Below, in pieces: positions 1 to 64,000 of a DNA stretch of 64,000 nucleotides. The notes beneath the pieces were generated by a model. That model had not been told where the DNA came from, did not search any database, and saw only the letters and a list, made by a program, of their open reading frames with translations. The translations under genes were made by a program, and so were the position numbers. The DNA lies in contig OZ296656.1 of NCBI GenBank assembly GCA_965655095.1, forward strand, positions 71,238,001 through 71,302,000. The letters run 5' to 3'. This DNA is from Haplodiscus bocki (Eukaryota). The stretch's first letter is position 1, and every line of letters begins with the position of its first letter.

Positions 1-23
1 TAAACTTCTACAATAACCAAGAA

Positions 24-1157
24 ATGTCACTTTACAACCAAGAAACAACAAACAATGTCAACCAAGAAATAATGAAACCAAGTTATTCTGGAATTGCGTC
101 GAACAATGTACCACCACCAAGAATTACGAACTTTTTAAAACTCAAGATCATTCCTCCATTCAACAAAGAGCATTTTGTAACAAAGAACACATTCGAATCG
201 GCTTCCAATCAATGTATTGCTACAATCCTAAGACAATTCTCTCCGGAACAACGAACAAAAATTACTCTGTCCAACACTTTTACGATTGTTGGAACCCGGC
301 GCCTGCATACATTTCATCTTGTTGCACCCACTGAGGCCGCGAGTACTGTTGAACGGTTACTATCTTCTGGAATCGAGTTACTTGGGAGAACTGTGTTCCC
401 CCAAAGTGACTCATTTGAACGGTGTATCCCTGGGATCTATCCAAAGTTTGTCCACATTCGCATCTTGCAATTACCATCAATTTGCCAGGATGACGAACTG
501 TCCGACCTCCTCCAACTTCCTGACTCAACGCAAATTACCTCGGTAAAGCACAATACAGAGGTATCAGCAATGATTCGTGTGGTATCCAAAGACCATGAAG
601 AGGAACTAAGACAATGGTCAATCAGGAATCATGAGAATGGAAATCTGCAATGGCATGATATCCCAATTTATGCATTCATCCCTGCGTTGCACCAGTGCCA
701 GCACTGTAAGGACAACAAACGACCTTTCCATGGGCATGACATTGCATGGTGTCGCCATGCAAGAGACGAAACGCAACAAAGAACAACAATTACCACAAAT
801 GACTGCAACCAAGAAGAACAAGTTTCACTCGGCAACCAAGCAACTATTCATGAAGTCTCCATTCCTGCTACTGGAGAAACCAATGACATTAACATGAACC
901 AAGATAACACTTCTGATAGCAACCAAGATAACAATGACAACCAAGAAGAAATCGAAGCTAACACCGAAACTGATGATGAACCTCAGAACCAATGGCAAAC
1001 AGCGCAACCAAGACATACAACAACAGCAACCAAGTCTCAGTCACAACCACCCAATCTCAAGCAGACTAAAAGGAAAGCGGACAAAGCTCGACTTTTTATG
1101 ACCAAGAATTTTTCGACTCATACGCCTGTAACTAAGAGGAAAAAACCTGCAAAATAA
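24..1157 (+). CDS. E1 ORF1 nucleic-acid-binding (gag-like) protein, N-terminus probably outside the window
   Basis: Homologous to the ORF1s at 4848, 17589 and 28483 (LKLKIIPPF, GRTV.P, YPK..IRILQLP, CQHC-x9-H-x4-C, acidic linker, basic tail). Lacks the IDGM.FYNGRA segment seen in its paralogues. Confidence 0.8.
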   Translation: MSLYNQETTNNVNQEIMKPSYSGIASNNVPPPRITNFLKLKIIPPFNKEHFVTKNTFESASNQCIATILRQFSPEQRTKITLSNTFTIVGTRRLHTFHLVAPTEAASTVERLLSSGIELLGRTVFPQSDSFERCIPGIYPKFVHIRILQLPSICQDDELSDLLQLPDSTQITSVKHNTEVSAMIRVVSKDHEEELRQWSIRNHENGNLQWHDIPIYAFIPALHQCQHCKDNKRPFHGHDIAWCRHARDETQQRTTITTNDCNQEEQVSLGNQATIHEVSIPATGETNDINMNQDNTSDSNQDNNDNQEEIEANTETDDEPQNQWQTAQPRHTTTATKSQSQPPNLKQTKRKADKARLFMTKNFSTHTPVTKRKKPAK

Positions 1158-1180
1158 TCTTTTTTCTTTCATGATTCCAA

Positions 1181-4100
1181 ATGAATGTTTTCTCTTTAAA
1201 TTGTCGAGGTCTGAAAGACCATCGACGTCTTCAAATAATTGTGAATCAATATCTAAAACACTCAGACCTCGACAATCTTTGCATTTGCTTGCAAGAAACT
1301 AAGATTTCTAATATAACTAATAACCATCTAAAAATCCTGGAGCACTATCACCTTTCATACAATATATATCCATCAGAAGGTCAATCTGGGGGACTTCTGA
1401 CAATTTTTCCAGAAAACTACATACTGCTCAACTCGTATAAATCATCAAACACAATAAGTCTCCACTTTTCTCAACATAATTACACAATAACTAATACATA
1501 CATCAAACCGACTGACTACCACCTCCAACAATTTTTATCGGATATTCTTGTTATTGAAAACTTTCAATGCAATACTCACGTCATTTGTGGAGACTTCAAC
1601 GCCCTCCCATCATCTGACTGCACTTCCAATCGTCATGTGCCACATAATGACTTCCGTCTTCTCAGATATCATCGTATTATTGACATTCTTCAAAATCTTC
1701 ATGTTGTACGTGTTGAAGCTCAATCACCATCAACTAAATTCACACATTTTGATAAAAGATGTAACTCTTCCAGTCAAATTGACCACTTTTTCACTAACCA
1801 ACCTCACTTTGTCTATGAGACAACCAAAATCTCTTTCTCTGATCATGCTCTTCTTTCTCTTGTTATTTCCAATGTAGCTATGACTGGTACCAGCTACTGG
1901 AAACTTAATGATAATGCATTGCAACATCATGCCTATATAGCAAGCATTCTCTCGGATTCCCTACAAATGTCTCACAATCAGAGTAATTTGCACTTGCACT
2001 ATTACGATCTCGTTAAAAATAAAATGAGAGATGGTCTTCGTTCTCTATGCATTTACTTACATCGCCAGGCAATTCATGAGGAGCGATAATTGAGTGTAGA
2101 AATCACAAAGGTAGAAAATGAAATCTCTAATAATAGTGCTGATCCCGTTCTAATTAAACAATTGTCAAACTTAAATTCACAATTCTTGAACTACCAGATT
2201 ATGAAAGCCAAAAAAGACTTCAAACAAATCAAACAATATTTTACAGACTGTCATCATGGCGACTCACATTCTGTTAAGAAACTCATCCGCTCCCGTAGAC
2301 AAAAAACTAACATCGAATCAATTGACTTACCAGATGGTTCCTCCACATTTAACATTGATGACATCTTCCGTGAGTTCCACAACCATTTCCCTCAGCGTTT
2401 CACACAGCCACTCTACACAACACCAGACACAATTTCTCACTTCTCAAACATTGAGGACATTTTACAACCATTTCTAACAACACACTGGAATGCAATACAG
2501 GATAATATTGCTCAAAATACTAATCATTCACAGGTAACAGAACAAGAGGTTGAAGAGGCTATTAAAAAACTTAATTCAAATAGTGCTCCAGGATTAGATG
2601 GTTTAACATCTAACTTTTATAAAGCAAATGCAAATTTTTTGTTCCGTACTTAACTACTATATTTAACTTAATAATTATACATAATTGGGTTCCTGAATCC
2701 TTCACAAGAACTGTAATTAAATTAATTCCGAAAAAACCGGTTTCACGTACGGTTGAAGACTATCGTCCGATTAGCCTTATTAATACTGATCAAAAAATTC
2801 TGTCTCATCTTCTTGCCAATCGCCTAAAAAAATCACTGACGTCCCTCATTGGCTCACACCAAACTGCATATCTTCCTCAACGCTCAATTCACTCCTGGCT
2901 TACCCAAGTTAATCTAAACTTAGAACAACTCACTGATGAGGATTGTCTTGTTGCCTGTGATTTTAGCAAAGCTTTTGATAAAATCAACCGAACCTATCTT
3001 TTTGCTCTCCTACAACAAATCGGCCTCCATCCGTCTACTCTTGGTCTCATCAAAGCAATGTATCACCATACAGATGCATTTCTTGATATCAACGGATCGC
3101 TATCTCCGGTTATTTATATGACTAATGGTGTCCGTCAGGGCTGTCCACTTTCTTCTCTTCTCTTTATACTTGGCATTGAACCTTTCCTATTTCATCTCCA
3201 ACACAACAGCTCCATTCAATCATCTATCCCTTTCAAAATTATAGCATATGCGGACGACATTACATGCTGCCTCAAGATCAAAAGCCTCAAAAATCTCTTC
3301 TCTACTATCAATACTTTCTCTTCGGTTACAAATCTATATCTAAATCTACAAAAAAACTGAGATCTTATGCTCTGGATCACTTCCGCATGGTTTGCTATCG
3401 GTTCCCACTATCAAAATTTTAGGTGTGGAGTTTACTTTAAATAATTTAGCAATCCAAATGAACTCTGCGATCCTACAGGCACACAAATCCCGAATTTTTT
3501 GTAATCCATATAATACCTTTCTCGCTCGCGCCAAAAATGTTGAGACATTTGTTATGCAAAAACTCATTCACCAAATTCGCCATAAATATGTCTTGAAGAC
3601 GCAACTGGAAAAAATTGATAATATTGTTGTGGATTCAATCTGGTTAGGACGTAAACACAATCTGAAGAAAACTATTCTCCAGAAACCGTGGGCATCCATG
3701 GGAATTGGTCTTAAAAATTTTACACAGGTTATCACTGCAGCTAAAACTATTGACTATAAAAATTTTCTTCACTCAAACCCTACAAGCAATCAATACAGCC
3801 TCTTTCGTAAGTCCAAACTCTTCATCAATTTGAGACGCCTACTGCGGACCTTCAACTGTACCATCAGTACGGATAATTCCTCTCAAATAATTCTCTGCAA
3901 ATCATCTCAAATCTTAGTAATCACTCCATTAATGCGTACTCGTGAAGTTTATCGTTTTCTTAGCTCCACAAATACTCATGAATCGGTCTCGCGTCTTACA
4001 CAACTTGCGTCCCGTCTCAACTATCCACCAGACTTAATCTTTTTGTTTCTTCGGCGCCTATGGAAGCACAAAGCATATGCAGCTTTTGAGAAAAACTATC

Positions 4101-4432
4101 TCTACCAATTTTTCATGAACTGTTACTTAGACAAAACCATCAAATTCCAACATGGCTGGAGTGACACTCCTTTCTGCTGTTTCTGTGGCTCTGCCGAGGA
4201 AACTTTCCATCACTTGCTTTCCGTATGTCCCAACATTCCTCATTTGAATCTCTTTCCAACAATAGGTCACCCTCAACTGAACTTCCAGCACTCGAGTGAC
4301 ATTTATCCTTTCAAACGACTCATTGCGCTTCTTATTTGTTCATGGAGCAACGACTCGCACAAATTTCAAAAGTATTTCTTAAATTGTGTGAAGCTCAGGA
4401 ACCCTACTATTAGTCTTAATATTAATACATAA
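1181..4432 (+). pseudogene. E1 ORF2 (APE endonuclease + reverse transcriptase + zinc finger), disrupted
   Basis: LNCRGL, LQET, GDFN, IDH, SDH (APE); APGLDG, GVRQGCPLS, YADD (RT); CCFC..ETFHHL..C. Stop at 2087-2089 and frameshifts. Confidence 0.93.
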
Positions 4433-4603
4433 ACACTTGGAACTAAGCTCGGCACGCAACCAAGTTCTTAAGATTCCTTGAATTTCTCTGTCAACTTAGA
4501 TAACTGTAAAGTTTTTTTGATTAATGATTCTTTATTTTGTTGTGTGTGTGTGTTTTCGCCTTGATTGATATGTAGAATACTTTAATGAATAAATTCTTTA
4601 AAA

Positions 4604-6111
4604 GCCTAACTGTTGATAACGCCTTTTGATTGTGATAGCTATTACTCGCTTGAATCCTTGGCTCGCTATTAATTGGCCGTCTCCTGTTGACTCAGGATTC
4701 TTGTCAATTTTTACCACATACTATTGTGGTGAAATTATCATTTGGAAATTGGAATTTATTCAAGTCTTCATTACCTTGCTTACGACCTGTGCTGGAATTG
4801 TGCTACAACTGAATTCTTTTCAGTTCTAGTTCAACCTCTATTACATAATGGAACAACCAACGGCCCTGCTCGACAACGTCTCTTCTTCTTCTTTAGCAAC
4901 CGGCAACCCGACAACGGCTAGACCATGTTATCTAACTCCTGAACAACGCGTACAATTCTACAACCAAGCACCATCAATGAACAACCAAGAATCTCCACTG
5001 CAAAACCAAGATGCACCACCTCAATCTATCACTAAATACATTGACCAAGCACTTCAGCAACCAAGTTACTCTGGAATTGCAACTGATAACCAAGCACCTC
5101 AACAACCAAGTTACTCTGGAATTGCATGCAACAACATTCCTCAACCAAGAACCATGAACATTCTCAAACTCAAAATTATCCCACCATTCAACAAAGACCA
5201 CTTCGCAACCAAGGAAACCTTCGAAACAGCCTCCAACCAATGTATCGCTGCTATTCTACGTCAATTCTCGCCGCAACTAAGAACGAAACTAACTATCTCA
5301 AAAACCTTCACCATGGTCGGAACACGCAGACTTCATACTTTCCACATTGTTGCTCCAATCGAGGCCACTGAAGTATTTTCTCGACTCCAGTCAAGTGGAA
5401 TTGAGATGCTAGGAAGAACAGTCATTCCCCAGGGTGACTCTTTTGAACGCTACATCCCAGGAATCTATCCGAAACACACTCCGGTACGAATCCTGCAACT
5501 TCCCTCACTGTGCCACGAACAAGAGATCCACGATATTCTTGATTTACCAGAATCCACTGAAATTACGTCTCTACGCCACAATACCGATGTGATCGACGGC
5601 ATGAATTTCTACAATGGGCGTGCATCAGCCATGGTTCGGGTAGTTTCAAAAGAACATGAGCAGATGCTACGTGAATGGTCGATCCGAAGTCATGAAAATG
5701 GGACACATGAATGGAACGGCATTCCAATTTATGCATTTATACCCTCACTTCATCACTGTCAACATTGTAAGGTTCACCGTCGGCCCTTCCACGGCCATGA
5801 CATTGCCTGGTGTCGATATGCAAAGGCCGATGAGCAACTAAGAACAATTCCTACTCCCAACAATGGCAACCAAGAGATCTCTGCTCAACCAAGTAACAAC
5901 GTCTCAACTTCTGAACCCACCGCTCAAACTGATGAAACTAATGTATCGAATGTGACTCCTGACGAAACCTCTGATGAAACTGACAACCAAGAAGATACTG
6001 AAACAAACAGCGAAGAAGATGACTCACAACGCCCATGGCAGACTGCACCCACACACTCAACCAAGACTCTATCTGCAACTAAGACCCAATCGCAACCATC
6101 TCCGTTTGACA
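4604..6111 (+). mobile_element. E2: family A element, 3'-truncated within ORF1
   Basis: Near-identical to 17343-18851. ORF1 from 4848 breaks at TTTGACA (6111) and joins the next unit's motif directly. Confidence 0.92.
5044..5135 (+). repeat. Two-copy 45-bp in-frame repeat in E2 ORF1 (QA.QQPSYSGIA); also in E5
   Basis: Visible in both DNA and translation. Confidence 0.85.
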
Positions 6112-6290
6112 GCCTAATTGTTGTGATAGCTCTTCTTGCTTGAATCTGAACTCTATTGCTGCTGATATTACAGCCTTTGTTGTGATTAATCATCGCTTGT
6201 AAAAGCGTTGTATTCACGTTACCTTGTACGTTACCTTGTGTAACCTTGTGTATTTACCTTGCCTATTTATTGTTAATATGACATTACATT

Positions 6291-7577
6291 ATGCCTTCTA
6301 TCCAAAAATTTCTGGAGTCACCAGTGACCAAGAAAAACTTTCCTAAATACCCTCATTCTCAAAACAAAACACCACAAAACAACTCAACAGAACCACAAAT
6401 TATAACAGAAACAACAACACAAATTGAAGAAGTGAAGAAAAATCCTGAACCTGCCCAAGTGCAACAAACTTCAGCCTCAGCATCTTACAGCGAAAGCGTC
6501 CAGACAGAGGCTCGAACTCGATCACAACGGATTATCAGAATGAAAATTGTACCACCATTTCGACGCGATCACTTCCAGTACCCCCAACTTCTCCAACAGG
6601 ATATCGACAAAGCCATGTGTGAAATCCTAAATGCATTCCAAATGAAACATCGCAATAAAATCACAATTTCCAGAACTAACCTAATGCAACAAGGCAGGAA
6701 CCTCCAAATCTTAATGGTAACGGCCCCAGGAGAGGCGGAGGAGGACGTGGCCAGAGCCAAACTATCCGGACTCCAAATCATGGGAAGAACGGTATTTCCA
6801 ACAGGGGACGAATTCTGGCGTTACTCCCCAAGCGAATATCCGAAGCGAGCTATGATAAGGATAACCAATTTACCTGTATTACTCGACACCGATGAACTGG
6901 AAGAATTACTGAATCTACCACCGGAAACTGAACTTAATGACCTCATGGAGAGAGAGACGGTGACTACAGAGGCAGGAAAAGTCCACACCGGACGAGCTCG
7001 AATACCAATTCTAATTCAGTCAAAATCGCATGAAGAAAAACTGTTTACATGGTCCATGTGGAGGAATTCCGACGCTGGGAGACTGGAGTGGAACGAGATC
7101 CCCATATACATGTCGATTCCCAGGCTCCACAAATGTGTAAGATGCGAAGCTGAAGGTCGCCGACAGTTCGTCGGCCATGACGAAAAGTGGTGCCGAATCG
7201 TCCGCCAGACTACGAAACCCCCTGAAGAAGATCCTCAAGTCCATGAAAAGATAGAAGATGAAGAGCAGACGGTGGCTGAAGGTGAAGTTACACAACAGAC
7301 TGGAACAGAAGTAGAGGAGGAAAACGTCAATGAAAACCCCACATCAACTGAAACAGAAGAAGACGAGGATACCCAAAGCTCAGAAGAAGAGGACAATTGC
7401 AACCATGAAAACAAAGACATGACGAATGAGGGTGAGGCAGAACACACAGGGAACAAATGGCAACCGGCAAAAAAGAAAAAGAGGAAAAGAAGTAAAGAAT
7501 CATCGAAAAGCAAAACTACAATAAGAAGCAAAACGGAAGGACCGAAAAGGAAAAGTAGGAACTATATTAATGACTGA
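6291..7577 (+). CDS. E3 ORF1 protein (428 aa, open)
   Basis: MKIVPPFRRDHF, GRTVFPTGDEFW, RITNLP, TGRARI, CVRC-x10-H-x4-C, acidic region, KKKKRKR basic stretch. Confidence 0.85.
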   Translation: MPSIQKFLESPVTKKNFPKYPHSQNKTPQNNSTEPQIITETTTQIEEVKKNPEPAQVQQTSASASYSESVQTEARTRSQRIIRMKIVPPFRRDHFQYPQLLQQDIDKAMCEILNAFQMKHRNKITISRTNLMQQGRNLQILMVTAPGEAEEDVARAKLSGLQIMGRTVFPTGDEFWRYSPSEYPKRAMIRITNLPVLLDTDELEELLNLPPETELNDLMERETVTTEAGKVHTGRARIPILIQSKSHEEKLFTWSMWRNSDAGRLEWNEIPIYMSIPRLHKCVRCEAEGRRQFVGHDEKWCRIVRQTTKPPEEDPQVHEKIEDEEQTVAEGEVTQQTGTEVEEENVNENPTSTETEEDEDTQSSEEEDNCNHENKDMTNEGEAEHTGNKWQPAKKKKRKRSKESSKSKTTIRSKTEGPKRKSRNYIND

Positions 7578-10851: not shown

Positions 10852-11006
10852 GTTTTTGAAGTCTATTTTGATATTCTGTTGATAAAATTGATTTATATTT
10901 GATTTCTTTGTGTTTTGATTTGATTTGATTCATTGATTTGTTTATTTTTATTTTTCTTTTCCATGATACTTGTAGATATTTAGTTGTAATAATACATTAT
11001 TCAAAA

Positions 11007-50344: not shown

Positions 50345-50455
50345 GCCTAATTGTTGTGATACTGCCTCGTTACTCTGCTGGACGAGAGAGTTTATTTACA
50401 CAGCGCCATATCACTAATCTTGCAGTGAAATCTGCAAAATTTGAGCAAGTGCAAG

Positions 50456-52518: not shown

Positions 52519-54241
52519 ATGCCATTACAAAAACATAACTTTCTCAGGAAGAACACAGGACCTCCGGTCAGATTCCCCGCATATGAACCCAAAACACCAT
52601 TTATAAGCCTAGAAGAATTCAACAAACAACAAGCACCAGAATATTCAAAAGAAAATTTCCCACAAGTCTCAACATCCAAGAATGACACTTTACAACAACC
52701 CAGAAGTAAATGGCAGACAAAAAAATTGTACATTCCAAAATTTCGAAAACGATCCGATAACGTATTCAAGCAACCAGAAAATTACCCGCAACTCAACAAC
52801 AAACAACATTGTGGCTGCTAACAGCAATGAAATGCCCATAGAACAATGTGAGAGCTCGGTGCCAAAGTACAATCAACCAGCCAATGCCCAAAATACTGAA
52901 CACTGTGAGTGTGATGAAGTAAACAGTCAACACCCAAAATCAAATTGTCACAACTCTGACATTGCTTCATCTGCCATTTCAGAGCAAGGGCATCAGCAAT
53001 CTTGCTCTTCTACTCCTGAGCAGATAACTGCAGAAACTGTTGCTCCTCCTCTCGTGGAGAAAGCTGCTGGAAATGCTCCTTCCTTCAGTGATAAAGTGAA
53101 ACAGACAAATAGTTACAAAGAGTACAGAAGATAACGTATCCTGCGGATGAAGGTGGTTCCACCCTTCCGAAGGGAACACTTCCTGGATAGACAAAAAATG
53201 GAATCTGACGTGAATGCTGCAATTAGAGAAATCCTCTGCATATTCCATCCAAAGTTCAGACCAATGGTCACCATTTCACGTACTAATTTAACTCAACTAA
53301 ATCGGAACATCCAGATACTAATGGTAACGGCACCCGAAGAAGCAGAGGAAGACCTAGCTAGAGCGAAGTTAAATGGAATTCAGATAATGGGGAAGACGGT
53401 GTTTCCGACAGGAGAAGAATTCTGGACATTCTTGCCTTCAGAATTCCCAAAGAGAGCATTGCTGCGTGTCAATAATCTCCCAATACTTTGCACTGACGAA
53501 GAGTTAGAAGAGCTCATGGAGTTGCCAGCGGACATAAAACTTACAGGTGATCTCCTACGGGAATCAGAAGAGACCGAACTGGGCAGACTGTTTACAGGAC
53601 GGGCAATGGTTCCTATTATCATACCATCAAAAAAACACGAGAACTTAGTTAAACAATGGTCAATACGCAAGAACTCAGAGAATATTACCATCTGGAACGA
53701 GGTTCCAATTTATATGAGTGTGCCCAGCCTGCATAAATGCAGGTTATGCGAACAAGAGGGCAGGAGACAAGTGATTGGCCATGATGAAAAATGGTGCCGA
53801 ATCGTCCGCCAGACAACGAAACCCCTGGAAGAAGAAGCTCAAACTCATGAAAGCGTGGAAAATGAAGTGCAAATGGTGCCTCAAAACGAACAAACCAAAG
53901 AAAGTGAGATGCAACAGAACAGTACACCTGCAGACGACTATCACAATGTCTCTCATACCCCGGCCTCCGATGATGACAATGACGAAACAGTAGCAACTAA
54001 TCCAAATAATTCAGAAGATGACGTTGTCTCTCATACCTCTTCCTCCGATGATGACAATAATGAAACAGTAGCAACTAATCAAAACAGCGACCATGATGGA
54101 AGGAAAAGAAACTGGCAGGAAGTGAAAAAGAAGAAAAGAAAGAGAAGTAATAAGTCAACAAAATCATTGAACAGTGGCAAAGCAACAAATTCAACAGAAT
54201 ACCCGGTGAGGAAAAGTCTGAACTTAAACTCAAATGGCTAG
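52519..54241 (+). pseudogene. E13 ORF1, disrupted upstream of the conserved core (53147-54241 open)
   Basis: N-terminus FPAYEPKTPFISLEEFNKQ aligns with E11 FPPYEPETPFMSLEDFNKQ; core MKVVPPFRREHF...CRLC-x10-H-x4-C. Confidence 0.82.
53947..54080 (+). repeat. Two-copy 78-bp in-frame repeat in E13 ORF1 (VSHT..SDDDN.ETVATN); also at ~62932-63065
   Basis: Visible in both DNA and translation. Confidence 0.85.
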
Positions 54242-57200
54242 TTTCTCCTTCTTGCAGCCTGTAGACTGCTTTTCTTGTAATATAAGGGGTCTGAAAAATC
54301 CGGAACGTTTAGTAGAAATTTGTGACATTGTTAAAAACAAAAGTAAAAGTAAAAATAACATAATAACCATACAGGAAACAAAAATACAAAATCTAAAGGA
54401 GGAACATAAAAGAGTCTTGAAAAATTTTAAACTTACTTATGAGATTGTACCTGCCAGGGGAACCGCTGGAGGTCTTTTAACCCTGTTTCCAGAATCACTA
54501 AACGTAAAACCCGTTATAAAAACTGATAATGTGTTAGCTCTTGCTCTGAATCAAAATGGTCCAATAATTTGTAATGTTTATATCAACCCAAAAGATTACC
54601 ATATGAAGGCCTTCGAAATTGCTTGTGAGGACCTTCGTGAAATATCGGATAATGGAATTCTCTTTATGGGTGACTTCAATGCCATCGAACCCAATCAACA
54701 CTACGATAAAGAAAAAATGTTCCCAAAAAACAATGATATCAGAATTACCAGATATCTCCGAATTTCTCGATTTCTAAACTTTTTTAATGCTTTTGACCTA
54801 GGAAAAACCCTAAGTATGATGGAAGCCACTCATTTTGATAAAAGAACAAGAGCTAACACAAGAATTGACTACTTCTTTGGAAACATCAATGTTCAAAATT
54901 CGAAAATGTTTCTACACTCAACCTCTTTCTCCGATCATAAATGCCTTCATCTTACCTATTTTATGAATGAAAATCAAATCGGAAATGGTTCGTGGAAGTT
55001 AAACAATGAGATTTTGCTGAAGGAAGCTGAAATAAAGGAGATAATACTGAACTGTTTTGAAAAAACCTCAGATATGGCGAGAAAATATGATTTATATAAG
55101 TCAAAACTTAGAGACCTCTTGCGTCTGCTATGTATTCGAAATGCAAAAGAAGAGAAATTTTTGGGTTTAAAAGTGGAGAGAGAGGTTGAGTTTTCAACTA
55201 AAAACCTGCAATCCAAAAAAGTTTGTTCGAAAAGTGATCTGGAAAATCATGAAGAAAAAGTAGAAAAACTGAAAACTTTTCAGGCTACCAGAGCAAAAGT
55301 GATTCTTCATTCTATAAAAAATTTTTATATGGATGTTAATGAAGGTGATCCAAAATCAACAAAATCAACGTTGAGAATTTTTGCAGAAAAACGCGAAATA
55401 AGAAAAGTCATCAACTCAGAAGGTGTGCCCATTGAAGATGAAAACGACATTCTTGATGAATTTGCCAGATACTTTGAAAAATGCTACAAACGGCCAAACG
55501 ATAGCAAAAAAATGGATCAAAAACTGTATGTAAGGAAGAAACACCTTCACAAATTTTTTAAAAAGAACAGAACGATACTTGAAGACTATAAGCTTCAGAA
55601 TGAAATCCAAAATGATGATGACAAGCCAATAACAGAATTTGAAGTCGAAAAAGCAGTTATGAAGCTGAATAGCAAAAGTGCTCCTGGATCGGATGGTCTA
55701 ACCTCTGACCTATATAAAACCCAAAAAGAAGTGTTTATACCCATTTTGACGGAATTATTTAATAAGATCCATGAGACTCAATATGTTCCTCCTTCTTTTA
55801 AACAAGCGATCATAAAACTGATACCAAAAAAGCCCAACAATGTAAACATAGAAAATTTCCGTCCAATCAGTCTGATCAACACTGATCAGAAAATTCTATC
55901 ACACATCATAGCAGAAAGGCTGCGCAAGGTCCTAAATGTGTTAATTGGGAGGCATCAAACTGCTCACTTGACAAACAGGAACATTAATACATCATTAATG
56001 AAACTACAAAAGTTCGCAACAGAAATGTCAAAAAGAGAAGGTATAGTAGCACTTGATTTTAATAAAGCTTTTGACAAAGTAAATAGGGAATACTTAATGG
56101 AGATGATAGGACGCCTTCCTTTAGATCGTCAAACAAAAAATATCATTAACAAGACTTATGAGGAGACAATTGCTTTGATAAATATCAGAGGCTCTTTCTC
56201 CCTTCCTTTCAAAACTGAAACCGGTGTTCGACAAGGCTGTCCCATGTCAGCACTAATGCTCAATCTTGCAATCGAACCGCTACTACAACGTATTCAAAAC
56301 ACCAACTTTATCAAATCCTCTCAAGAAATTAAATCGATAGCCTTCGCCGATGATATCTCTATATGTATGTACACAAGCTCGATCGGAAATCTCTTTGCAA
56401 TTCTCAAAGACTTTGCGGATATGTCTGATTTAACAGTTAATATCGACAAAAGTAAAACGCTCACAGCTGGCAAAATGTATAAAGAGGAAAAATGGAAGCT
56501 ACAAAAAGTAAAACGAGCAAAAATACTAGGTTTATATATAAATGTTGGCGGAAAACTAGATAATGAAACAAAGAATGAAATGATGAGTACAGCTTTGAAA
56601 ACTTCCCAGTTCATGGGACCCACACTTTCTTTGCATGCAAGAGCAAAAAACATTGAGACCTTTATCGTTCCCAAACTCATATATTCTCTGAGGCACTATC
56701 CAAAATCCAAATCGTTCATGAAAAAACTGAATGCGGTAATCATTAATCAATTATGGTTAGACAAAAAACACAATGTTAATCAAGAAATCGTCAACACACC
56801 ACATCAACAAGGGGGTATAGGTTTGAGAAACCTACAAAAATTAATATTTACAGCCAAGTTGATGGATTTAAAAAACTTAGCGTTTTGTGATCTTGAGAAA
56901 TCCTTTGTTCCCACGTACAAAAACTCAAAAGCTTTCAGTAATCTGTTGAATGATCTAAAACACGATGGTATTGAAATATTAGAGTTCGACATTAGAAGTG
57001 TATCCTTTAATTTCTTCTTCCAAAGCTTTGAAGTGACCGAAAAAACAACCTTCAAAGAAATATATAAATTCTTGATAGAATCAATCATCGCAATTACATG
57101 TTTCAAAAATATTAACATGACTGCAATGAAACTCAATATTTCTCCCAATATCATAATGGACTTCATTAAAAAGCTTTGGAAGAACAAGAGACTAAAATCC

Positions 57201-57506
57201 TTTGATAAAAACATTCTGTATAACTTTCTAATGAACTCATATCTTGAGAAACAAGAAAAATGGTTAAAACAATTAGTCCCGCATCCACTATGCTTCGCAT
57301 GTGGTGAAAAATTTGAAACGTGGGATCACCTATTGTTTGAATGCCGTGAATTTTCCAAGACTCGTAACTTACTAAAACTAAAAAACTGGTCAGATGTCTT
57401 TACAGACAAGACTGGCCTAGCACCCAAACTTTTAGTAGTAGTAGCTGTAGTACTATCATCACGGACAGAGGAAAAAGGTAACTACTTTCAATTTCTAACG
57501 AAATAA
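54234..57506 (+). CDS. E13 ORF2: intact 1090-aa APE endonuclease / reverse transcriptase / zinc-finger protein (L1/Tx1 type)
   Basis: CNIRGL, IQET, GDFN, THFDKRT..TRIDY, SDH; APGSDG, RPISLINTDQKI, HQ, LDFNKAFD, GVRQGCPMS, FADD, GGIGL; CFAC..ETWDHLLFEC. Confidence 0.95.
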   Translation: MASFSFLQPVDCFSCNIRGLKNPERLVEICDIVKNKSKSKNNIITIQETKIQNLKEEHKRVLKNFKLTYEIVPARGTAGGLLTLFPESLNVKPVIKTDNVLALALNQNGPIICNVYINPKDYHMKAFEIACEDLREISDNGILFMGDFNAIEPNQHYDKEKMFPKNNDIRITRYLRISRFLNFFNAFDLGKTLSMMEATHFDKRTRANTRIDYFFGNINVQNSKMFLHSTSFSDHKCLHLTYFMNENQIGNGSWKLNNEILLKEAEIKEIILNCFEKTSDMARKYDLYKSKLRDLLRLLCIRNAKEEKFLGLKVEREVEFSTKNLQSKKVCSKSDLENHEEKVEKLKTFQATRAKVILHSIKNFYMDVNEGDPKSTKSTLRIFAEKREIRKVINSEGVPIEDENDILDEFARYFEKCYKRPNDSKKMDQKLYVRKKHLHKFFKKNRTILEDYKLQNEIQNDDDKPITEFEVEKAVMKLNSKSAPGSDGLTSDLYKTQKEVFIPILTELFNKIHETQYVPPSFKQAIIKLIPKKPNNVNIENFRPISLINTDQKILSHIIAERLRKVLNVLIGRHQTAHLTNRNINTSLMKLQKFATEMSKREGIVALDFNKAFDKVNREYLMEMIGRLPLDRQTKNIINKTYEETIALINIRGSFSLPFKTETGVRQGCPMSALMLNLAIEPLLQRIQNTNFIKSSQEIKSIAFADDISICMYTSSIGNLFAILKDFADMSDLTVNIDKSKTLTAGKMYKEEKWKLQKVKRAKILGLYINVGGKLDNETKNEMMSTALKTSQFMGPTLSLHARAKNIETFIVPKLIYSLRHYPKSKSFMKKLNAVIINQLWLDKKHNVNQEIVNTPHQQGGIGLRNLQKLIFTAKLMDLKNLAFCDLEKSFVPTYKNSKAFSNLLNDLKHDGIEILEFDIRSVSFNFFFQSFEVTEKTTFKEIYKFLIESIIAITCFKNINMTAMKLNISPNIIMDFIKKLWKNKRLKSFDKNILYNFLMNSYLEKQEKWLKQLVPHPLCFACGEKFETWDHLLFECREFSKTRNLLKLKNWSDVFTDKTGLAPKLLVVVAVVLSSRTEEKGNYFQFLTK

Positions 57507-57672
57507 GACAACGATACTAAGTTGCATCTTCCATTACAGACCCCTAAACTTTTCATCCTTTATATTTTTACATCCTTTACTTGACATTTATTTACGTTCT
57601 CATTTATTTATTTACTTTCAAATTGTTTGATTACTTGTAGATTCAGATTTGGTTATAATAAATTCTTTAAAA

Positions 57673-59330
57673 GCCTTGTTGTGATAGCGCGAGGCGAAAC
57701 GCTGCCGGATTTAATTTTGGCCTATTTTCGTCCAATCGCTGCTAACTTTGCAAATTATTCGCAAAATGTCTTTGTTGAATTCAAAGCAAGAACGAAATTA
57801 TGCTCAAAGTGTTAATGAAGCCACAGCAAATTTAGCAGCTTCTGTTCCTATCATTGTACGTTTTGTTTTACCAATTCCAAAAGAATTTAATGGCAGATTA
57901 CTCGACAAACTGTTCTTAGAGTCTATTGTTGCCGTCCAAAATTGCTTACCACGTGAACAAGCTGCACAAACTACAATATTTAAATGCACAATCCAACGAA
58001 AACGAGGAAAATTGAAGGCAATTACCGTAATTTTCCCCTCAAATTTGCGGAAAGATGCGACAGATTTGTTAACTAGAGGTATTATCATGAATGGCAGAAC
58101 CATTCCTCCTTATTCAATTCACGACCCGTCAAATTCAGATGCTGATTATCCAAAACATTTTCGAATTTCGTTCAGAAACATGCCGCATTGCTTATCAAAG
58201 GAAGATATTGTTACATCTTGTGGATTGGAATCTTTCAAAATGGGAGAAATTATACATCAGCAGAGACGCCTGCCAAACGGAAGCCTGTTTTACACAGGTT
58301 TGCCCAGAGTTGACGCCATTATTGAAAATTTAGATGAAAAAAAAACAGACTCAAAGAGTGGTCCAAAGATGCCTTTCAACAAAGTTTCTACTGCAATGGT
58401 GCAATATTTCAATGTTACTGCCCTGCCTTCGCAACTAATTCGGAAAAAGCCTCTGAAAAGCAAAACCAACAACCACCCCCACAAAAGAAGCAAGCTACAG
58501 AACACATGGCCCCAGAGCAACAAGCAGAATCTACTATTGAGTCTCAGCAAGAACAAACAGATTCCGTTACCATAACTTCGACTGAAGAAGTTGCATGTGA
58601 AATTGAAGCAGTACAACCTGAACAAGATGCCCAAGAAATGGAATGTCACTCTTCTTCTGAGGAAGAAACGCCTGAAAATGATACGCAAACCGAACTTGCC
58701 TCCAAAATCCAGAAACGACAAAAGTCGACCCATTATTTTGACCTCATTAGAAGACAAATATTCGATGAAAAGACTATGCTGAGAACCTATCCAGAAGCAC
58801 AATCCCTCATAGAGGAACAACACCATATTAGAATTGAAGATGACAACCAAAAGTGCTTAAACGAGCTGTTTTTAGTACAAGTTTTAACAGAACAAGAAGA
58901 ACTCTTTGATAATTTCAAAATTTTCAATGGTGGAACTAGTATTGATTCATACTATAAATTTGTAGAAGTTAGACGAAGATATGCTGTAAATTTGGAGCGC
59001 GAAGCCTTAAATCTTTTCTGTGCTAACCTTTTTGGTCATGTGAAATGTACATTTACCCTAAGAAAAATTCCTTCCTTTCAGAACTGAAAAATGAGATTTT
59101 GAGAACCTTTAAACTTCTTGATTTTTCCACAAAAAAAATACATACTACTCTAGATCCAAATTCTTTTTGAGTACAATTTGCATCTTTTCAATCAGGCTTT
59201 TTTTGGAGCTACACTCTCATACACATGAAACTATAGTGCATCACTCAATTTAATTGTACTATGAACATACTTATATACTAAATTTTATAGTATTGGTAAA
59301 TTTGTAGTCTCCTTAATAAATTCTTCAAAA
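57673..59330 (+). mobile_element. E14: family E non-autonomous ORF1-only element (~1.66 kb)
   Basis: Motif variant GCCTTGTTGTGATA; single frameshifted ORF 57766-59087; ends AATAAATTCTTCAAAA; no EN or RT. Confidence 0.85.
57766..59087 (+). pseudogene. E14 divergent ORF1-like protein with extra C-terminal domain, frameshifted
   Basis: GIIMNGRTIPPY, YPKHFRISFRNMP, FYTG align with the ORF1 cores; LLDKLFLES and IIHQQRRL align with family D. Confidence 0.75.
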
Positions 59331-61317
59331 GCCCCATTGTTGTGATACTGCCTCGTTACTCTGCTGGACGAGAAATTTTATTTACACAGCGCCATATTAC
59401 TAATCTTGCAGTGAAATCTGCAAAATTTGAGCAAGTGCAAGATGACTTACCTGAAGACGAACGAGCTTGATAATAATAGTTACAAAAATGTTCTTGATTC
59501 CTCTTCGAATTCGACCTCAAATTCTGAAAATTTGCCAATTGTCATTAACTTTGCTTTACCGCTGACAGTGGAAATTCCTAAGAACTACAAATTGCTTGAT
59601 AAAATCTTTGTTGAAGCTGTTATTGCTGTAAAAAAAACAATTAAACTCCAATGAAATTACCATCTTCAAAAGTACAATTTTGCGAAACAAAGGCAATTTG
59701 AAATGCATTACCGTTATCATTCCTGCCAAGCTTGAAAATGCAGCTACTTCACTTATTTATGATGGCATTACAATTCGTGAACGACAAATACGGCCTTATT
59801 CTGTTCAACACTCCAACCCAAACAACAGTGCCTATCCACAAAAAGATTACCGATTTCATTCCGAAACGTTCCTCACTTCTTGAATGACAACGATATTTTG
59901 CAAAACTGTGGTCTTCAAAGCTTCACATTTGGCAGCAAGATTATTCACCAACAACGGAAACTCTCTGATGGCGGCCTGTTTTTCACTGGGGAAGCGAGAA
60001 CAACAGTCTTGATCAACAATGAAGATGAGGAAAGTTTACTTCAGAACTGGGCCAACTCAGCATATGACAAAATCTTCCTTTGTAGTGGCGTTTACTTCAA
60101 GTGTTGCTGTATTCCACTCATCCAATGCCCTCTATGCGCTAGTGACAACCTACCCAGTGCACATCATCACTCAAGATGCCCAAAACAACCACCAGAAGAA
60201 AGCCAAATGAGAACTGATGAACAAAGTCCAAACGAGAAAGTATCAACAGACTGTGTTATGGGAACTTCAGAAACAGTGTCAATGCACAAGGAACGTGAAA
60301 TTTCAGCCTCTGAAGATGAAGAACCAATCTCCAAAGCAGGCCGATGAAGCTGCTGAAACAGAGACAAGTGACAGTGATGAGGAGCTATCAACAGCAGAAC
60401 AAAGTGATGATCTCGCAGAAAAAGATGTAACTCCCACTCCAGAACCCAAACCAGAGCAAAAGACAACCCATTCAACCACTGCACTTCCCGCAAGATCTGA
60501 ATGGACCAGTGAACGAGGTTATCCTTATAAGCCAGCTGCAGAACAGAAGTATCCATTCTTTTTAGAAGAGAGTCAGAACAAAATTTTAACACCCGAAATC
60601 ATTTTCAAACAAATTTCTTCTATGAAAGAATATTTGAATAAAACTTGTCAAACCTCTGGAACCATCAATCTTTTAGATGAAGATAAAGAAGTTTCAAATT
60701 AGTACAGCCGCTTAAAAGATCTAAAGTTGAAGAACTTTTTAGTCAATCCAACTGGAAAGCTAATGACTCTGATGATATTTTAGCTTCACATTTTCAATTT
60801 TATACAACTATTAGGAAATTTGACCCCTTCTATGATGCGAAAACACGTCAAATTTTCACAATCAACCTGCTGAATAGAATTGTGAAAACTTTTACGCCGG
60901 TAAAACCGTGAAATAGTCTTTGAAATAATGTAACCAAAAGATGAAAAACTGCGAACTTTTGACTTGACAAACCATTTATTTTCTACAAAACTTTCAATAG
61001 AAACCTACAACTTACAAGTCTTTCAAACATCCTTATTAGACCTTCTGAAGGTTCAGACTTTAATTAAACTCCAAAACCTCTGTTAGGAGTAAACCGTAAC
61101 TTTGCAACATAGTTTTCCATAACTCTAGACTATATCATACCGACTTTCACCATTCACTTTATAGTATAACCAACATCCCTCCATATGAAAGTGCTGTTTA
61201 TTTCTTTGAATGGTGCTTCTTACTATATAAAACTTCCCATATTTATACTTTACCTACCTACATAAAAACTTTGATGTTACTTGTGAATTTATAGACTGCA
61301 TAATAAATTCTTTAAAA
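59331..61317 (+). mobile_element. E15: family D ORF1-only element, copy of E12
   Basis: Same ORF fragments as E12 at offset 8985; motif variant GCCCCATTGTTGTGATA. Confidence 0.87.
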
Positions 61318-64000
61318 GCCTAATTGTTGTGATAGCGTTACTCTGTCAGAGAATTAACTTTGTTTGTTTAACGCCATTCTTGCAAAACCTTGCAGCTCTT
61401 GCAAATTTTGAGCAAAATTGAGATACCGAACGAACTTGTTTCTCAAGTTGTGATTTAAGTTTCGTTATTTCCTTCGCTTTCATTTTGTTTTTTACCTTAC
61501 AAAATGCCATTACAAAAACATAACTTTCTCAGGAAGAACACAGGACCTCCGGTCAGATTCCCCGCATATGAACCCAAAACACCATTTATAAGCCTAGAAG
61601 AATTCAACAAACAACAAGCACCAGAATATTCAAAAGAAAATTTCCCACAAGTCTCAACATCCAAGAATGACACTTTACAACAACCCAGAAGTAAATGGCA
61701 GACAAAAAAATTGTACATTCCAAAATTTCGAAAACGATCCGATAACGTATTCAAGCAACCAGAAAATTACCCGCAACTCAACAACAAACAACATTGTGGC
61801 TGCTAACAGCAATGAAATGCCCATAGAACAATGTGAGAGCTCGGTGCCAAAGTACAATCAACCAGCCAATGCCCAAAATACTGAACACTGTGAGTGTGAT
61901 GAAGTAAACAGTCAACACCCAAAATCAAATTGTCACAACTCTGACATTGCTTCATCTGCCATTTCAGAGCAAGGGCATCAGCAATCTTGCTCTTCTACTC
62001 CTGAGCAGATAACTGCAGAAACTGTTGCTCCTCCTCTCGTGGAGAAAGCTGCTGGAAATGCTCCTTCCTTCAGTGATAAAGTGAAACAGACAAATAGTTA
62101 CAAAGAGTACAGAAGATAACGTATCCTGCGGATGAAGGTGGTTCCACCCTTCCGAAGGGAACACTTCCTGGATAGACAAAAAATGGAATCTGACGTGAAT
62201 GCTGCAATTAGAGAAATCCTCTGCATATTCCATCCAAAGTTCAGACCAATGGTCACCATTTCACGTACTAATTTAACTCAACTAAATCGGAACATCCAGA
62301 TACTAATGGTAACGGCACCCGAAGAAGCAGAGGAAGACCTAGCTAGAGCGAAGTTAAATGGAATTCAGATAATGGGGAAGACGGTGTTTCCGACAGGAGA
62401 AGAATTCTGGACATTCTTGCCTGCAGAATTCCCAAAGAGAGCATTGCTGCGTGTCAATAATCTCCCAATACTTTGCACTGACGAAGAGTTAGAAGAGCTC
62501 ATGGAGTTGCCAGCGGACATAAAACTTACAGGTGATCTCCTACGGGAATCAGAAGAGACCGAACTGGGCAGACTGTTTACAGGACGGGCAATGGTTCCTA
62601 TTATCATACCATCAAAAAAACACGAGAACTTAGTTAAACAATGGTCAATACGCAAGAACTCAGAGAATATTACCATCTGGAACGAGGTTCCAATTTATAT
62701 GAGTGTGCCCAGCCTGCATAAATGCAGGTTATGCGAACAAGAGGGCAGGAGACAAGTGATTGGCCATGATGAAAAATGGTGCCGAATCGTCCGCCAGACA
62801 ACGAAACCCCTGGAAGAAGAAGCTCAAACTCATGAAAGCGTGGAAAATGAAGTGCAAATGGTGCCTCAAAACGAACAAACCAAAGAAAGTGAGATGCAAC
62901 AGAACAGTACACCTGCAGACGACTATCACAATGTCTCTCATACCCCGGCCTCCGATGATGACAATGACGAAACAGTAGCAACTAATCCAAATAATTCAGA
63001 AGATGACGTTGTCTCTCATACCTCTTCCTCCGATGATGACAATAATGAAACAGTAGCAACTAATCAAAACAGCGACCATGATGGAAGGAAAAGAAACTGG
63101 CAGGAAGTGAAAAAGAAGAAAAGAAAGAGAAGTAATAAGTCAACAAAATCATTGAACAGTGGCAAAGCAACAAATTCAACAGAATACCCGGTGAGGAAAA
63201 GTCTGAACTTAAACTCAAATGGCTAGTTTCTCCTTCTTGCAGCCTGTAGACTGCTTTTCTTGTAATATAAGGGGTCTGAAAAATCCGGAACGTTTAGTAG
63301 AAATTTGTGACATTGTTAAAAACAAAAGTAAAAGTAAAAATAACATAATAACCATACAGGAAACAAAAATACAAAATCTAAAGGAGGAACATAAAAGAGT
63401 CTTGAAAAATTTTAAACTTACTTATGAGATTGTACCTGCCAGGGGAACCGCTGGAGGTCTTTTAACCCTGTTTCCAGAATCACTAAACGTAAAACCCGTT
63501 ATAAAAACTGATAATGTGTTAGCTCTTGCTCTGAATCAAAATGGTCCAATAATTTGTAATGTTTATATCAACCCAAAAGATTACCATATGAAGGCCTTCG
63601 AAATTGCTTGTGAGGACCTTCGTGAAATATCGGATAATGGAATTCTCTTTATGGGTGACTTCAATGCCATCGAACCCAATCAACACTACGATAAAGAAAA
63701 AATGTTCCCAAAAAACAATGATATCAGAATTACCAGATATCTCCGAATTTCTCGATTTCTAAACTTTTTTAATGCTTTTGACCTAGGAAAAACCCTAAGT
63801 ATGATGGAAGCCACTCATTTTGATAAAAGAACAAGAGCTAACACAAGAATTGACTACTTCTTTGGAAACATCAATGTTCAAAATTCGAAAATGTTTCTAC
63901 ACTCAACCTCTTTCTCCGATCATAAATGCCTTCATCTTACCTATTTTATGAATGAAAATCAAATCGGAAATGGTTCGTGGAAGTTAAACAATGAGATTTT
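61318..64000 (+). mobile_element. E16: family B4 element, copy of E13, runs off the window
   Basis: ORF1 61504-63226 with the same lesions as E13; ORF2 starts at 63219 (MASFSFLQ) and is open to the window end. Confidence 0.93.
63219..64000 (+). CDS. E16 ORF2 5' part (APE endonuclease domain), partial
   Basis: Matches 54234-55015; absent from the ORF track because it has no stop inside the window. Confidence 0.88.
   Translation, partial: MASFSFLQPVDCFSCNIRGLKNPERLVEICDIVKNKSKSKNNIITIQETKIQNLKEEHKRVLKNFKLTYEIVPARGTAGGLLTLFPESLNVKPVIKTDNVLALALNQNGPIICNVYINPKDYHMKAFEIACEDLREISDNGILFMGDFNAIEPNQHYDKEKMFPKNNDIRITRYLRISRFLNFFNAFDLGKTLSMMEATHFDKRTRANTRIDYFFGNINVQNSKMFLHSTSFSDHKCLHLTYFMNENQIGNGSWKLNNEI

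What the first reader, a model, noticed from the sequence alone, without database searches (positions are those of the whole stretch)
1..64000. Multi-family, gap-free head-to-tail array of Tx1/L1-like LINEs built on one shared junction sequence
Seen: 16 units from at least five very divergent families, all on the + strand. At 13 joints the 3' end of one unit abuts the 5' start of the next as AATNMATTMTTYAAAA|GCCTAATTGTTGTGATA, with no host DNA, no variable poly(A) and no 5'-truncated copies. Known: ordinary LINEs disperse, are mostly 5'-truncated and have variable tails and TSDs. Some Tx1-clade elements are sequence-specific, and Drosophila HeT-A/TART/TAHRE form mixed head-to-tail arrays. Inference: this is a retrotransposon community sharing one target or terminal signal, where each insertion regenerates the site so elements stack on each other.
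Basis: partly seen in the sequence, partly recalled or inferred. Interest (0 to 1): 0.93.

Follow-up and report, generated by a model that had tools for sequence, protein, structure and literature searches.

The report
LINE pile-up at spliced-leader RNA genes
The shared 17-base "junction" is the first 17 bases of an acoel worm's spliced-leader RNA gene, and the array is a pile-up of jumping genes (LINEs) that insert only at that spot and duplicate those 17 bases each time: a familiar lifestyle, but a target not previously reported for this type of LINE.

Summary
The window holds 15 copies of GCCTAATTGTTGTGATA ("T"), 10 of them exact, all on the + strand. They separate 16 LINE units of four deep autonomous lineages plus ORF1-only units.

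The array is not gap-free. Bases 11441-17342 are ordinary DNA plus a spliced-leader (SL) gene promoter remnant.

T is nucleotides 1-17 of the 31-nt spliced leader published for Symsagittifera roscoffensis. The SL-5S rRNA gene cluster, with 624 intact SL genes, lies 1.2 Mb away on the same chromosome.

In this genome and in a second acoel species, single insertions read promoter | T | LINE | T + rest of the SL gene. A mutant T duplicated on both sides of one insertion, and 5'-truncated copies that still carry T upstream, show that T is a 17-bp target-site duplication. It is not a terminal signal of the element.

Stacking follows because T survives on both sides of each insertion. Recent segmental duplications also enlarge the array.

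The elements are L1-group LINEs: an APE endonuclease, a reverse transcriptase (RT), and an ORF1 with two RRM domains and a zinc knuckle. All verified T-site elements form one clade.

The known SL-gene retrotransposons (CRE/SLACS/CZAR, NeSL) use a restriction-like endonuclease instead. I therefore class this as a new variant of a known kind. A follow-up in this scan reached the same reading for the adjacent window (s1-364264).

The parts
1..4603 (+). Unit 1, lineage A autonomous LINE. It starts 458 bp before the window and is decayed.
   Evidence: ORF1 and ORF2 homology lies in several reading frames. It is 77-78% identical in DNA to units 17343 and 28204.
4604..6111 (+). Lineage A copy truncated at its 3' end after about 1.5 kb. 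It carries a T variant with an indel.
   Evidence: It is 99.3% identical to 17343-18851. The junction sequence was read.
6112..11006 (+). Lineage B-type autonomous LINE. ORF1 is 6291-7577 and ORF2 is 7570-10815, with stops.
   Evidence: The first 1.48 kb is unlike the other B copies, so the 5' module is mosaic.
11007..11440 (+). T plus a 434-bp 5' fragment of a lineage A element. This is the tail of the first array.
   Evidence: It is 97.5% identical to 43522-43946. Homology ends at 11440.
11441..16920 (.). Non-LINE DNA with fragments of dispersed repeats. It is part of a 5.9-kb block duplicated at C9:71197010-71202925.
   Evidence: There is no ORF of 200 aa or more. The only full-length matches are itself and the duplicate, which is 99.68% identical.
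16921..17342 (+). Remnant of the SL-5S repeat spacer and the SL RNA gene promoter, ending ...cgctttta directly before T. This is the head of the second array.
   Evidence: It is 75% identical to positions 1301-1688 of the SL-5S unit. The upstream sequence compares with intact SL genes.
17343..17359 (+). T, which is SL exon nt 1-17, in its native position next to the promoter. The other T copies start at 4604, 6112, 11007, 23168, 28204, 33195, 38442, 43522, 45288, 50345, 52333, 57673, 59331 and 61318.
17343..23167 (+). Lineage A autonomous LINE, decayed.
23168..28203 (+). Lineage B autonomous LINE, frameshifted.
28204..33194 (+). Lineage A autonomous LINE, decayed.
33195..38441 (+). Lineage D autonomous LINE. 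T is followed by two partial T relics at 33217-33242.
   Evidence: In the tree it pairs with P0008 of locus L045.
38442..43521 (+). Lineage B autonomous LINE, 96.6% identical to 23168-28203. Its T has a 2-base deletion.
43522..45287 (+). Lineage A derivative that lacks ORF2. It keeps the 5' UTR, ORF1 and the 3' tail.
   Evidence: It is 84% identical to the first 1.6 kb of unit 28204. Eight tandem copies of this type lie at C9:71332259-71344574.
45288..50344 (+). Lineage B2 autonomous LINE, about 71% identical in DNA to B. It is frameshifted.
50345..52332 (+). ORF1-only non-autonomous unit N1, decayed here.
   Evidence: Intact 534-aa relatives lie inside SL genes of a second species (L044).
52333..57672 (+). 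Lineage C autonomous LINE with both reading frames open. ORF1 is 53147-54241 and ORF2 is 54234-57506.
   Evidence: Pfam finds Exo_endo_phos, RVT_1 and zf-RVT. The best solved relative is human L1 ORF2p at E 2e-54. ORF1 folds as a tandem RRM with a CCHC knuckle.
57673..59330 (+). ORF1-only non-autonomous unit N2. Its T variant lacks AAT.
   Evidence: Its 5' end matches elements at L044 7848 and 19612.
59331..61317 (+). Duplicate of N1, 99.5% identical.
61318..64000 (+). Duplicate of the lineage C element, 99.96% identical. It runs off the window.

Best explanation

Shown:
- T is SL nt 1-17.
- The element's 3' end always abuts SL position +1.
- Its 5' end follows a second copy of T that sits directly behind the SL promoter.
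- T is therefore a 17-bp target-site duplication.

Inferred mechanism:
- The APE endonuclease nicks the bottom strand at the -1/+1 boundary, which is the SL transcription start, and primes reverse transcription there.
- The top strand is cut after nt 17, so T is copied to both sides of the insert.
- Each new copy then sits directly behind the host SL promoter, which probably transcribes it starting within T.
- Because an intact T lies on both sides of every insert, later insertions land beside earlier ones, always in the same orientation. This gives head-to-tail stacks of unrelated lineages with only T between them.

Unequal crossover and segmental duplication then amplify blocks of the stack. 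The window lies in a 1.85-Mb SL domain of chromosome 9, beside the working SL-5S cluster. Here the SL gene bodies have been lost and most elements are dead.
For: Identity of T:
- Dispersed copies read T plus 14 more bases ending in AG, followed by unrelated sequence.
- This 31-mer is the published S. roscoffensis SL (PMC9911081).
- SL genes with a GTAAGT donor sit in SL-5S tandem repeats at C9:72.47 Mb onward. There are 624 exact intact copies.

Junctions:
- 22 sites read AAAA + full SL exon + GTAAG. One was read in full: ORF2 C-terminus, 3' UTR, then an intact SL gene and 5S (L042).
- No site has a LINE 3' end joined to SL nt 18-31.
- 23 sites read promoter CTTTTA | T | LINE 5' UTR.
- Window 16921-17342 is SL spacer and promoter lying directly before T.

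Second species (its SL-5S unit is only 79% identical):
- L044 has five SL genes in a row, each carrying one insertion flanked by T.
- L041 has two elements stacked in one SL gene.

Proof that T is a TSD:
- In L066 the same mutant T flanks one 5090-bp insertion on both sides.
- In L070 a copy missing its first 2922 bp still has promoter + T upstream.

Other support:
- APE + RT + CCHC domains and the match to L1 ORF2p.
- All six verified T-site elements and window lineages A-D form one clade with SH-aLRT support of 100.
- Block duplications at 99.5-99.96% identity, and eight units sharing one mutant T.
Against: - No RNA data were available, so transcription from the SL promoter and the RNA ends are inferred.
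- The nick positions are deduced from junctions, not from cleavage assays.
- About half of the sampled 3' tails of two lineages lie outside T, so specificity is not absolute.
- The one open-frame copy lies 35 kb inside the array, not at its head. Either internal T copies are used as targets or recombination moved it. I could not tell which.
- The junction at 6112, where a 3'-truncated unit abuts an exact T, is not explained by simple sequential insertion.
- The tree is a quick search with unnamed outgroups.
Confidence: 0.88

Rival explanations
1. T is a terminal signal carried by the element's RNA, whose transcripts start at SL +1. The arrays would arise mainly by end-to-end template jumping of the reverse transcriptase from the 5' end of one RNA to another, giving concatemeric cDNA.
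For: - The unit at 4604-6111 is 3'-truncated and is fused to the first base of the next T.
- Partial T relics sit just inside several 5' UTRs, for example at 33217-33242. This suggests that T is sometimes copied from RNA.
- Off-target 3' flanks often begin GC, GCC or GCCT, as read-through RNA would give.
Against: - Single insertions carry T on both sides within otherwise normal SL genes.
- One insertion is flanked by the same mutant T on both sides (L066).
- 5'-truncated copies, which cannot carry an RNA 5' end, still have T upstream (L070 and L044).
- At most this route contributes some junctions.
Confidence: 0.07
2. The array is essentially a satellite. A few old insertions at one SL gene were amplified by unequal crossover and segmental duplication, so repeated targeting of T within the stack played little part.
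For: - The block 50345-59330 is repeated three times at 99.5-99.96% identity.
- Eight 1.76-kb units share one mutant T.
- A 5.9-kb block is duplicated at 99.68% identity.
- A roughly 100-kb tandem array of 2-kb ORF1-only units lies on chromosome 10.
Against: - The window alone holds at least ten mutually distinct units from four deep lineages (30-58% ORF2 identity), each bounded by T. That needs many separate insertions.
- Two-element stacks inside a working SL array in another species show stacking by insertion (L041).
Confidence: 0.2
3. The 17-mer was acquired by SL trans-splicing of LINE transcripts that were then retrotransposed, as in the SL-bearing retrocopies seen elsewhere in this genome.
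For: - Hundreds of dispersed retrocopies carry the SL at their 5' end.
- One array unit, at C9:71360660, begins with the full 31-nt SL.
Against: - Trans-splicing adds all 31 nt, whereas LINE units carry only nt 1-17.
- T sits directly behind genomic SL promoters, and the LINE 3' ends abut intact SL genes.
Confidence: 0.02
4. This is a telomere-type array built by end-addition of retrotransposons, like Drosophila HeT-A/TART/TAHRE.
For: The array is mixed and head-to-tail with a single orientation, and it includes Gag-only (ORF1-only) partners.
Against: - The locus lies at 71.2 Mb of a 92.8-Mb chromosome.
- Insertions have a fixed TSD in a host gene.
- The same structure occurs inside SL-5S tandem arrays.
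Confidence: 0.01

Closest known systems
CRE1/CRE2, SLACS and CZAR (trypanosomatids) and NeSL-1 (C. elegans): retrotransposons specific for the spliced-leader exon
   Same: - They insert at one fixed position inside the SL exon of tandem SL RNA genes.
- The element sits behind the SL promoter with the first nucleotides of the SL at its 5' end.
- They have a fixed TSD.
- They spare single-copy genes (PMC4640811; other details from general knowledge).
   Different: - Those elements belong to early-branching clades. They have a restriction-like (PD-(D/E)xK) endonuclease downstream of the RT and usually a single ORF.
- The elements here have an N-terminal APE endonuclease, two ORFs and L1-group affinity.
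- The cut positions also differ: here -1/+1 and +17.
R1 in 28S rDNA and the target-specific Tx1-clade elements (Keno in U2 snRNA genes, Mutsu in 5S, Dewa in tRNA repeats)
   Same: - APE-type LINEs with exact 3' junctions in multicopy RNA genes.
- A TSD of fixed length.
- Occasional tandem or stacked insertions, and accumulation at the edges of the gene array (PMC4640811; general knowledge for R1).
   Different: - The SL RNA gene was not among the targets listed for APE-type elements in the papers I could search.
- The stacks here reach at least 187 kb with four deep lineages and ORF1-only partners.
- Tx1-clade membership was not tested.
Drosophila HeT-A/TART/TAHRE telomeric arrays
   Same: Mixed head-to-tail arrays in one orientation, containing autonomous elements and Gag-only partners.
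   Different: - The Drosophila arrays sit at chromosome ends and grow by addition to the end.
- This array is internal and is targeted to a host gene sequence with a 17-bp TSD.
Utopia (RLE-type LINE in U2 snRNA genes)
   Same: It targets a small nuclear RNA gene and occasionally inserts in tandem in the target (PMC4640811).
   Different: It has a restriction-like endonuclease and a different target gene.

Membership tests
Target-specific non-LTR retrotransposons (general kind) | ORF2 with an endonuclease and a reverse transcriptase | tested here: met
   Pfam finds Exo_endo_phos, Exo_endo_phos_2, RVT_1 and zf-RVT. The match to L1 ORF2p covers residues 12-872.
Target-specific non-LTR retrotransposons (general kind) | An exact 3' junction at one host sequence, with a TSD of fixed length | tested here: met
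   The 3' end abuts SL +1 at 22 sites. A 17-bp duplication is seen in L041, L044, L066 and L070, including a paired mutant T and 5'-truncated copies.
Target-specific non-LTR retrotransposons (general kind) | The great majority of copies lie in the target | tested here: inconclusive
   Nearly all 5' ends of the form T + LINE follow an SL promoter or a LINE tail. However, about half of the sampled 3' tails of lineages A and C lie elsewhere, often before GC or GCC.
L1 group of LINEs (L1 and Tx1 clades) | N-terminal APE, RT and a C-terminal CCHC motif, with closest similarity to L1-type ORF2p | tested here: met
   In the tree the acoel clade groups with fish, frog, cephalopod and plant L1-like proteins, away from the insect elements (quick tree, unnamed references).
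L1 group of LINEs (L1 and Tx1 clades) | ORF1 with RRM domain(s) plus a CCHC zinc knuckle (the 'type I' ORF1p, named from memory) | tested here: met
   The AF2 model has pLDDT 86. Foldseek matches tandem-RRM proteins at E 1e-5. C198, C201, H212 and C217 are (nearly) invariant.
Tx1 clade specifically | Placement with Tx1L and its relatives in an RT phylogeny against Repbase references | not testable with these tools
   No named Tx1 or L1 reference sequences could be fetched. Only unnamed database relatives were available.
CRE/SLACS/CZAR/NeSL (SL-exon retrotransposons) | Insertion inside the SL exon of SL RNA genes | tested here: met
CRE/SLACS/CZAR/NeSL (SL-exon retrotransposons) | A restriction-like endonuclease C-terminal to the RT and no APE domain | tested here: not met
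   The APE domain lies at the N-terminus (residues 14-235). No RLE domain was detected.
HeT-A/TART/TAHRE-type telomeric arrays | Location at the chromosome end and growth by end-addition without a target-site duplication | tested here: not met
   The locus is internal, at 71.2 of 92.8 Mb, and has a 17-bp TSD.

The most novel reading that the evidence does not exclude
An ancient, monophyletic L1-group clade is an obligate resident of the acoel SL-5S locus. It borrows the host SL promoter and the first 17 nt of the leader, so its mRNA starts like a trans-spliced host mRNA, possibly with the same cap. It supports its own Gag-only parasites. LINE-tail | T joints act as self-renewing targets that build LINE-only chromosomal domains, an internal counterpart of Drosophila telomere arrays. 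A second lineage has independently taken the exon-intron boundary of the same gene.
Probability: 0.3. Interest if true: 0.75.

Novelty: new variant of a known kind. Interest (0 to 1): 0.55.

Why it matters
- It adds a convergent case to a classic theme. SL RNA genes were known as targets of restriction-like-endonuclease retrotransposons in trypanosomes and nematodes. Here an APE-type, L1-group clade found the same refuge in an early-branching bilaterian.
- It gives a natural series of APE endonucleases, 30-90% identical, that all recognise one 17-30 bp site. This is useful for studying how L1-type endonucleases acquire sequence specificity.
- It shows how a TSD that preserves the target lets unrelated elements stack into arrays of hundreds of kilobases.
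- For annotators of acoel genomes, it explains a large repeat domain beside the SL-5S cluster, and why about 3% of otherwise perfect SL genes have lost their promoter to a LINE.

Tried and rejected
- Insertion after nt 17 without duplication: rejected. No LINE tail is joined to SL nt 18-31.
- The idea that LINE 3' tails mimic the bases upstream of the nick, so that the full target is rebuilt: set aside. AATTCTTTAAAA looks like promoter AATTGCTTTTA only when shifted. In register only about 3 of 9 bases agree.
- RNA evidence: none. No RNA runs hold the element. The DNA runs are short unitigs that break at T. They bridge only the joint at 57540-57748 and cannot confirm the array on long reads.
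- Single-sequence AlphaFold of ORF1 failed, with pLDDT 34. It was rescued with an 18-sequence alignment.
- Sequence searches of ORF1 against Pfam and the PDB gave nothing.
- The protein-atlas search gave only 'hypothetical protein' clusters with RT and APE domains.
Array tails and the minus-strand arrays at C9:72.8 Mb were therefore not read.
- The first tree run timed out.
- Distant relatives in a third assembly (P0144 and P0153; L067-L069) show no T, and P0144 has random flanks. The wider acoel clade is therefore not all SL-specific.
Full report
**Observation.** T (GCCTAATTGTTGTGATA) occurs 12 times in the window with at most 2 mismatches, always on the + strand, against 0.02 expected by chance. 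Three more copies with small indels lie at 4604, 38442 and 57673. The exceptions are 6112, which follows a unit cut off at its 3' end, and 17343, which follows non-LINE DNA. Self-comparison and tblastn with the one open-frame copy give 16 units. These are four deep autonomous lineages with ORF2 identity to lineage C of about 30-34% (A), about 39% (D) and 55-58% (B), one ORF2-less derivative of A, and two kinds of short ORF1-only units. Most copies are broken by frameshifts. Only 52333-57672 and its 99.96% duplicate at 61318 keep both frames open. With flanks fetched from the genome, the array runs over at least C9:71202909-71389794, all on the + strand.

**What the 17-mer is.** The genome holds 1455 exact copies of T. 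Twenty dispersed copies all continue for 14 more bases to a 31-mer ending in AG, followed by unrelated sequences and preceded by unrelated flanks. This is the signature of a spliced leader on retroposed RNAs. The 31-mer is the trans-spliced leader published for the acoel Symsagittifera roscoffensis (PMC9911081). The genome is therefore that species or a close relative. The SL RNA genes (leader, then GTAAGT) lie with a 5S rRNA gene in tandem units of 1732-2572 bp starting at C9:72473736. That is 1.2 Mb from the window, on the same chromosome and strand. There are 624 exact intact copies.

**Where the elements sit.**
- 22 sites read AAAA + complete SL exon + GTAAG. One was read in full: ORF2 C-terminus, 3' UTR...aataaattctttaaaa, then an intact SL gene and 5S (L042).
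- No LINE tail is joined to SL nt 18-31.
- Conversely, 23 sites read SL promoter (CTTTTA) | T | LINE 5' UTR.
- In the window, 16921-17342 is homologous to the last 0.4 kb of the SL-5S spacer and ends in the promoter sequence directly before T at 17343.
- A second species, whose SL-5S unit is 79% identical over the genes and has an unalignable spacer, shows the structure cleanly. In L044, five successive SL genes each carry one insertion as promoter | T | element | T + rest of the SL gene. In L041, two elements are stacked in one SL gene of an otherwise normal array.

**T is a target-site duplication, not an element terminus.** Two observations decide this.
- In L066, one 5090-bp insertion is flanked on both sides by the same mutant T, with A at position 7. 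This is expected if the target's own T was duplicated.
- In L070, a copy lacking its first 2922 bp (99.85% identical to the 3' part of its full-length neighbour) still has promoter + T upstream and T + SL gene downstream. L044 14394 is another 5'-truncated case.

The 3' junction is exact. The 5' junction varies, falling after nt 17, 16 or 11. This fits microhomology-guided joining.

From the junctions I infer a bottom-strand nick at the -1/+1 boundary and a top-strand nick after +17. This is not shown biochemically. Partial T relics just inside some 5' UTRs (33217-33242) suggest that transcripts start within T at the SL promoter and that T is occasionally copied from RNA as well. No RNA run was available to test this.

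**Why the elements stack.** After insertion an intact T lies on both sides of the element. The next insertion therefore lands beside the first, in the same orientation, with only T between them.

Recombination also builds the array:
- The block 50345-59330 recurs at 59331 and +68315 at 99.5-99.96% identity.
- Eight 1.76-kb units share one mutant T.
- A 5.9-kb block (host DNA + SL promoter + T, window 11441-17359) is duplicated at 99.68% identity at C9:71197010-71202925. Different elements follow T in the two copies, and there is no LINE homology in the 19 kb upstream of that copy. It therefore marks the left edge of the domain.

The array is thus not gap-free, and some joints are copies rather than insertions.

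**What the elements are.**
- ORF2 has an N-terminal APE endonuclease, an RT and a C-terminal CCHC motif. Its best solved relative is human L1 ORF2p, at E 2e-54 over residues 12-872. R2 proteins match only the RT region.
- ORF1 has no sequence match. With an 18-sequence alignment it folds confidently (pLDDT 86) as two RRM domains, followed by a conserved C-C-H-C knuckle.
- Database relatives fall from 94% to about 32% RT identity within unnamed ENA assemblies. Identity then drops to 31% or less for fish, frog, cephalopod and plant L1-like proteins.
- In a quick maximum-likelihood tree, window lineages A-D and all six elements whose T-site I verified form one clade of 22 rows (SH-aLRT 100). This clade lies inside a 33-row acoel clade (SH-aLRT 100).
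- A dispersed element with random flanks (P0144; L067/L068) and a lineage that uses a different SL site branch below that clade.
- I could not fetch named Tx1 or L1 references, so 'Tx1' remains untested. The L1 group is supported.

**Specificity is strong but not absolute.** Nearly all T + LINE 5' ends are at SL promoters or LINE tails. In addition there is a roughly 100-kb tandem array of 2-kb ORF1-only units on chromosome 10. About half of the sampled 3' tails of lineages A and C lie elsewhere. There, after the A-run, the flank starts with G in 13 of 15 independent loci and with GC in 11 of the 15. This could be nick-site preference or read-through of T in the RNA.

**Comparison with known systems.** SL-exon-specific retrotransposons are known (CRE, SLACS, CZAR, NeSL), but they carry a restriction-like endonuclease. 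APE-type target-specific LINEs are known in the R1 and Tx1 clades, for rDNA, U2, 5S, tRNA, microsatellites and telomeric repeats (PMC4640811; PMC8869645). I found no paper describing an APE-type LINE in SL genes, or any such element in acoels. The S. roscoffensis genome paper does not mention it. The library is incomplete, so this is absence of evidence only. Another follow-up in this scan reached the same reading for the adjacent window (s1-364264).

**Verdict.** This is a real and well-explained feature: a new variant of a known kind. It is of moderate interest to transposon biologists, and it is useful as a natural panel of L1-type endonucleases with one shared specific site.

Noticed in passing
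L041:15069-19270 and L044:94-330 (second species): A second site-specific LINE lineage uses the same gene at another position. The element (ORF1 237 aa, APE+RT ORF2 1055 aa) is flanked by a 15-bp duplication of SL intron nt 1-15, and its 3' end abuts the exon-intron boundary. A 130-bp 5'-truncated copy lies at the same site in L044. Two weak candidate sites exist in this genome, at C9:72148600 and C11:90852692.
   Followed up: partly
L001-L020 and L046-L065 (dispersed sites on chromosomes 1-12): Hundreds of dispersed retrocopies begin with the complete 31-nt spliced leader, followed by several repeated, unrelated sequence families with random upstream flanks. One (L016) has a truncated SL relic directly before a full SL. 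This indicates retroposition of trans-spliced RNAs, as reported for dinoflagellates.
   Followed up: no
G000:C10:82994660-83090967 (minus strand): A roughly 100-kb head-to-tail array of about 2-kb (some about 3.1-3.3 kb) ORF1-only units on another chromosome, with joints reading AATAAA | T | CGGCGTTACGC. It looks like satellite-type amplification of the non-autonomous partner.
   Followed up: no
L044:2045-3649 and 4950-6554; window 50345-52332 and 57673-59330: ORF1-only elements encode an intact 534-aa protein in the second species. It has an ORF1-like RRM and knuckle part plus a roughly 200-aa C-terminal extension with no known domain. The window's copies are decayed.
   Followed up: partly
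G000:C87:59247-67883: Six tandem copies of a lineage C-like 3' tail are followed by CCCGCCGAAGGTA instead of T, at spacings of 1154-3346 bp. This could be another target, or a satellite seeded by a LINE tail.
   Followed up: no
L043:1209-21737 (ERZ26859043): Tandem genes carry a variant leader-like start (GCCGAATTGTTGTGATA, then a different continuation) behind a different promoter. One LINE 3' end lies 7 bp upstream of it. This could be a second SL-type RNA gene family or a decayed one.
   Followed up: no
window 11441-17359 and G000:C9:71197010-71202925: The 5.9-kb duplicated block ends exactly at the last base of T, and different elements follow T in the two copies. The history (head insertion after duplication, conversion, or recombination at T) is unresolved.
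   Followed up: partly
L036-L037 (C9:72466001-72486000): SL-5S unit lengths (1732, 1900, 2068, 2236, 2572 bp) differ by multiples of 168 bp, because the spacer holds a variable number of 168-bp subrepeats.
   Followed up: no
window 6112-7592: The first 1.48 kb of this unit (5' UTR and ORF1) is unlike the other lineage B copies, while the rest is 89-90% identical to them. The element is a mosaic, suggesting module exchange between lineages.
   Followed up: no
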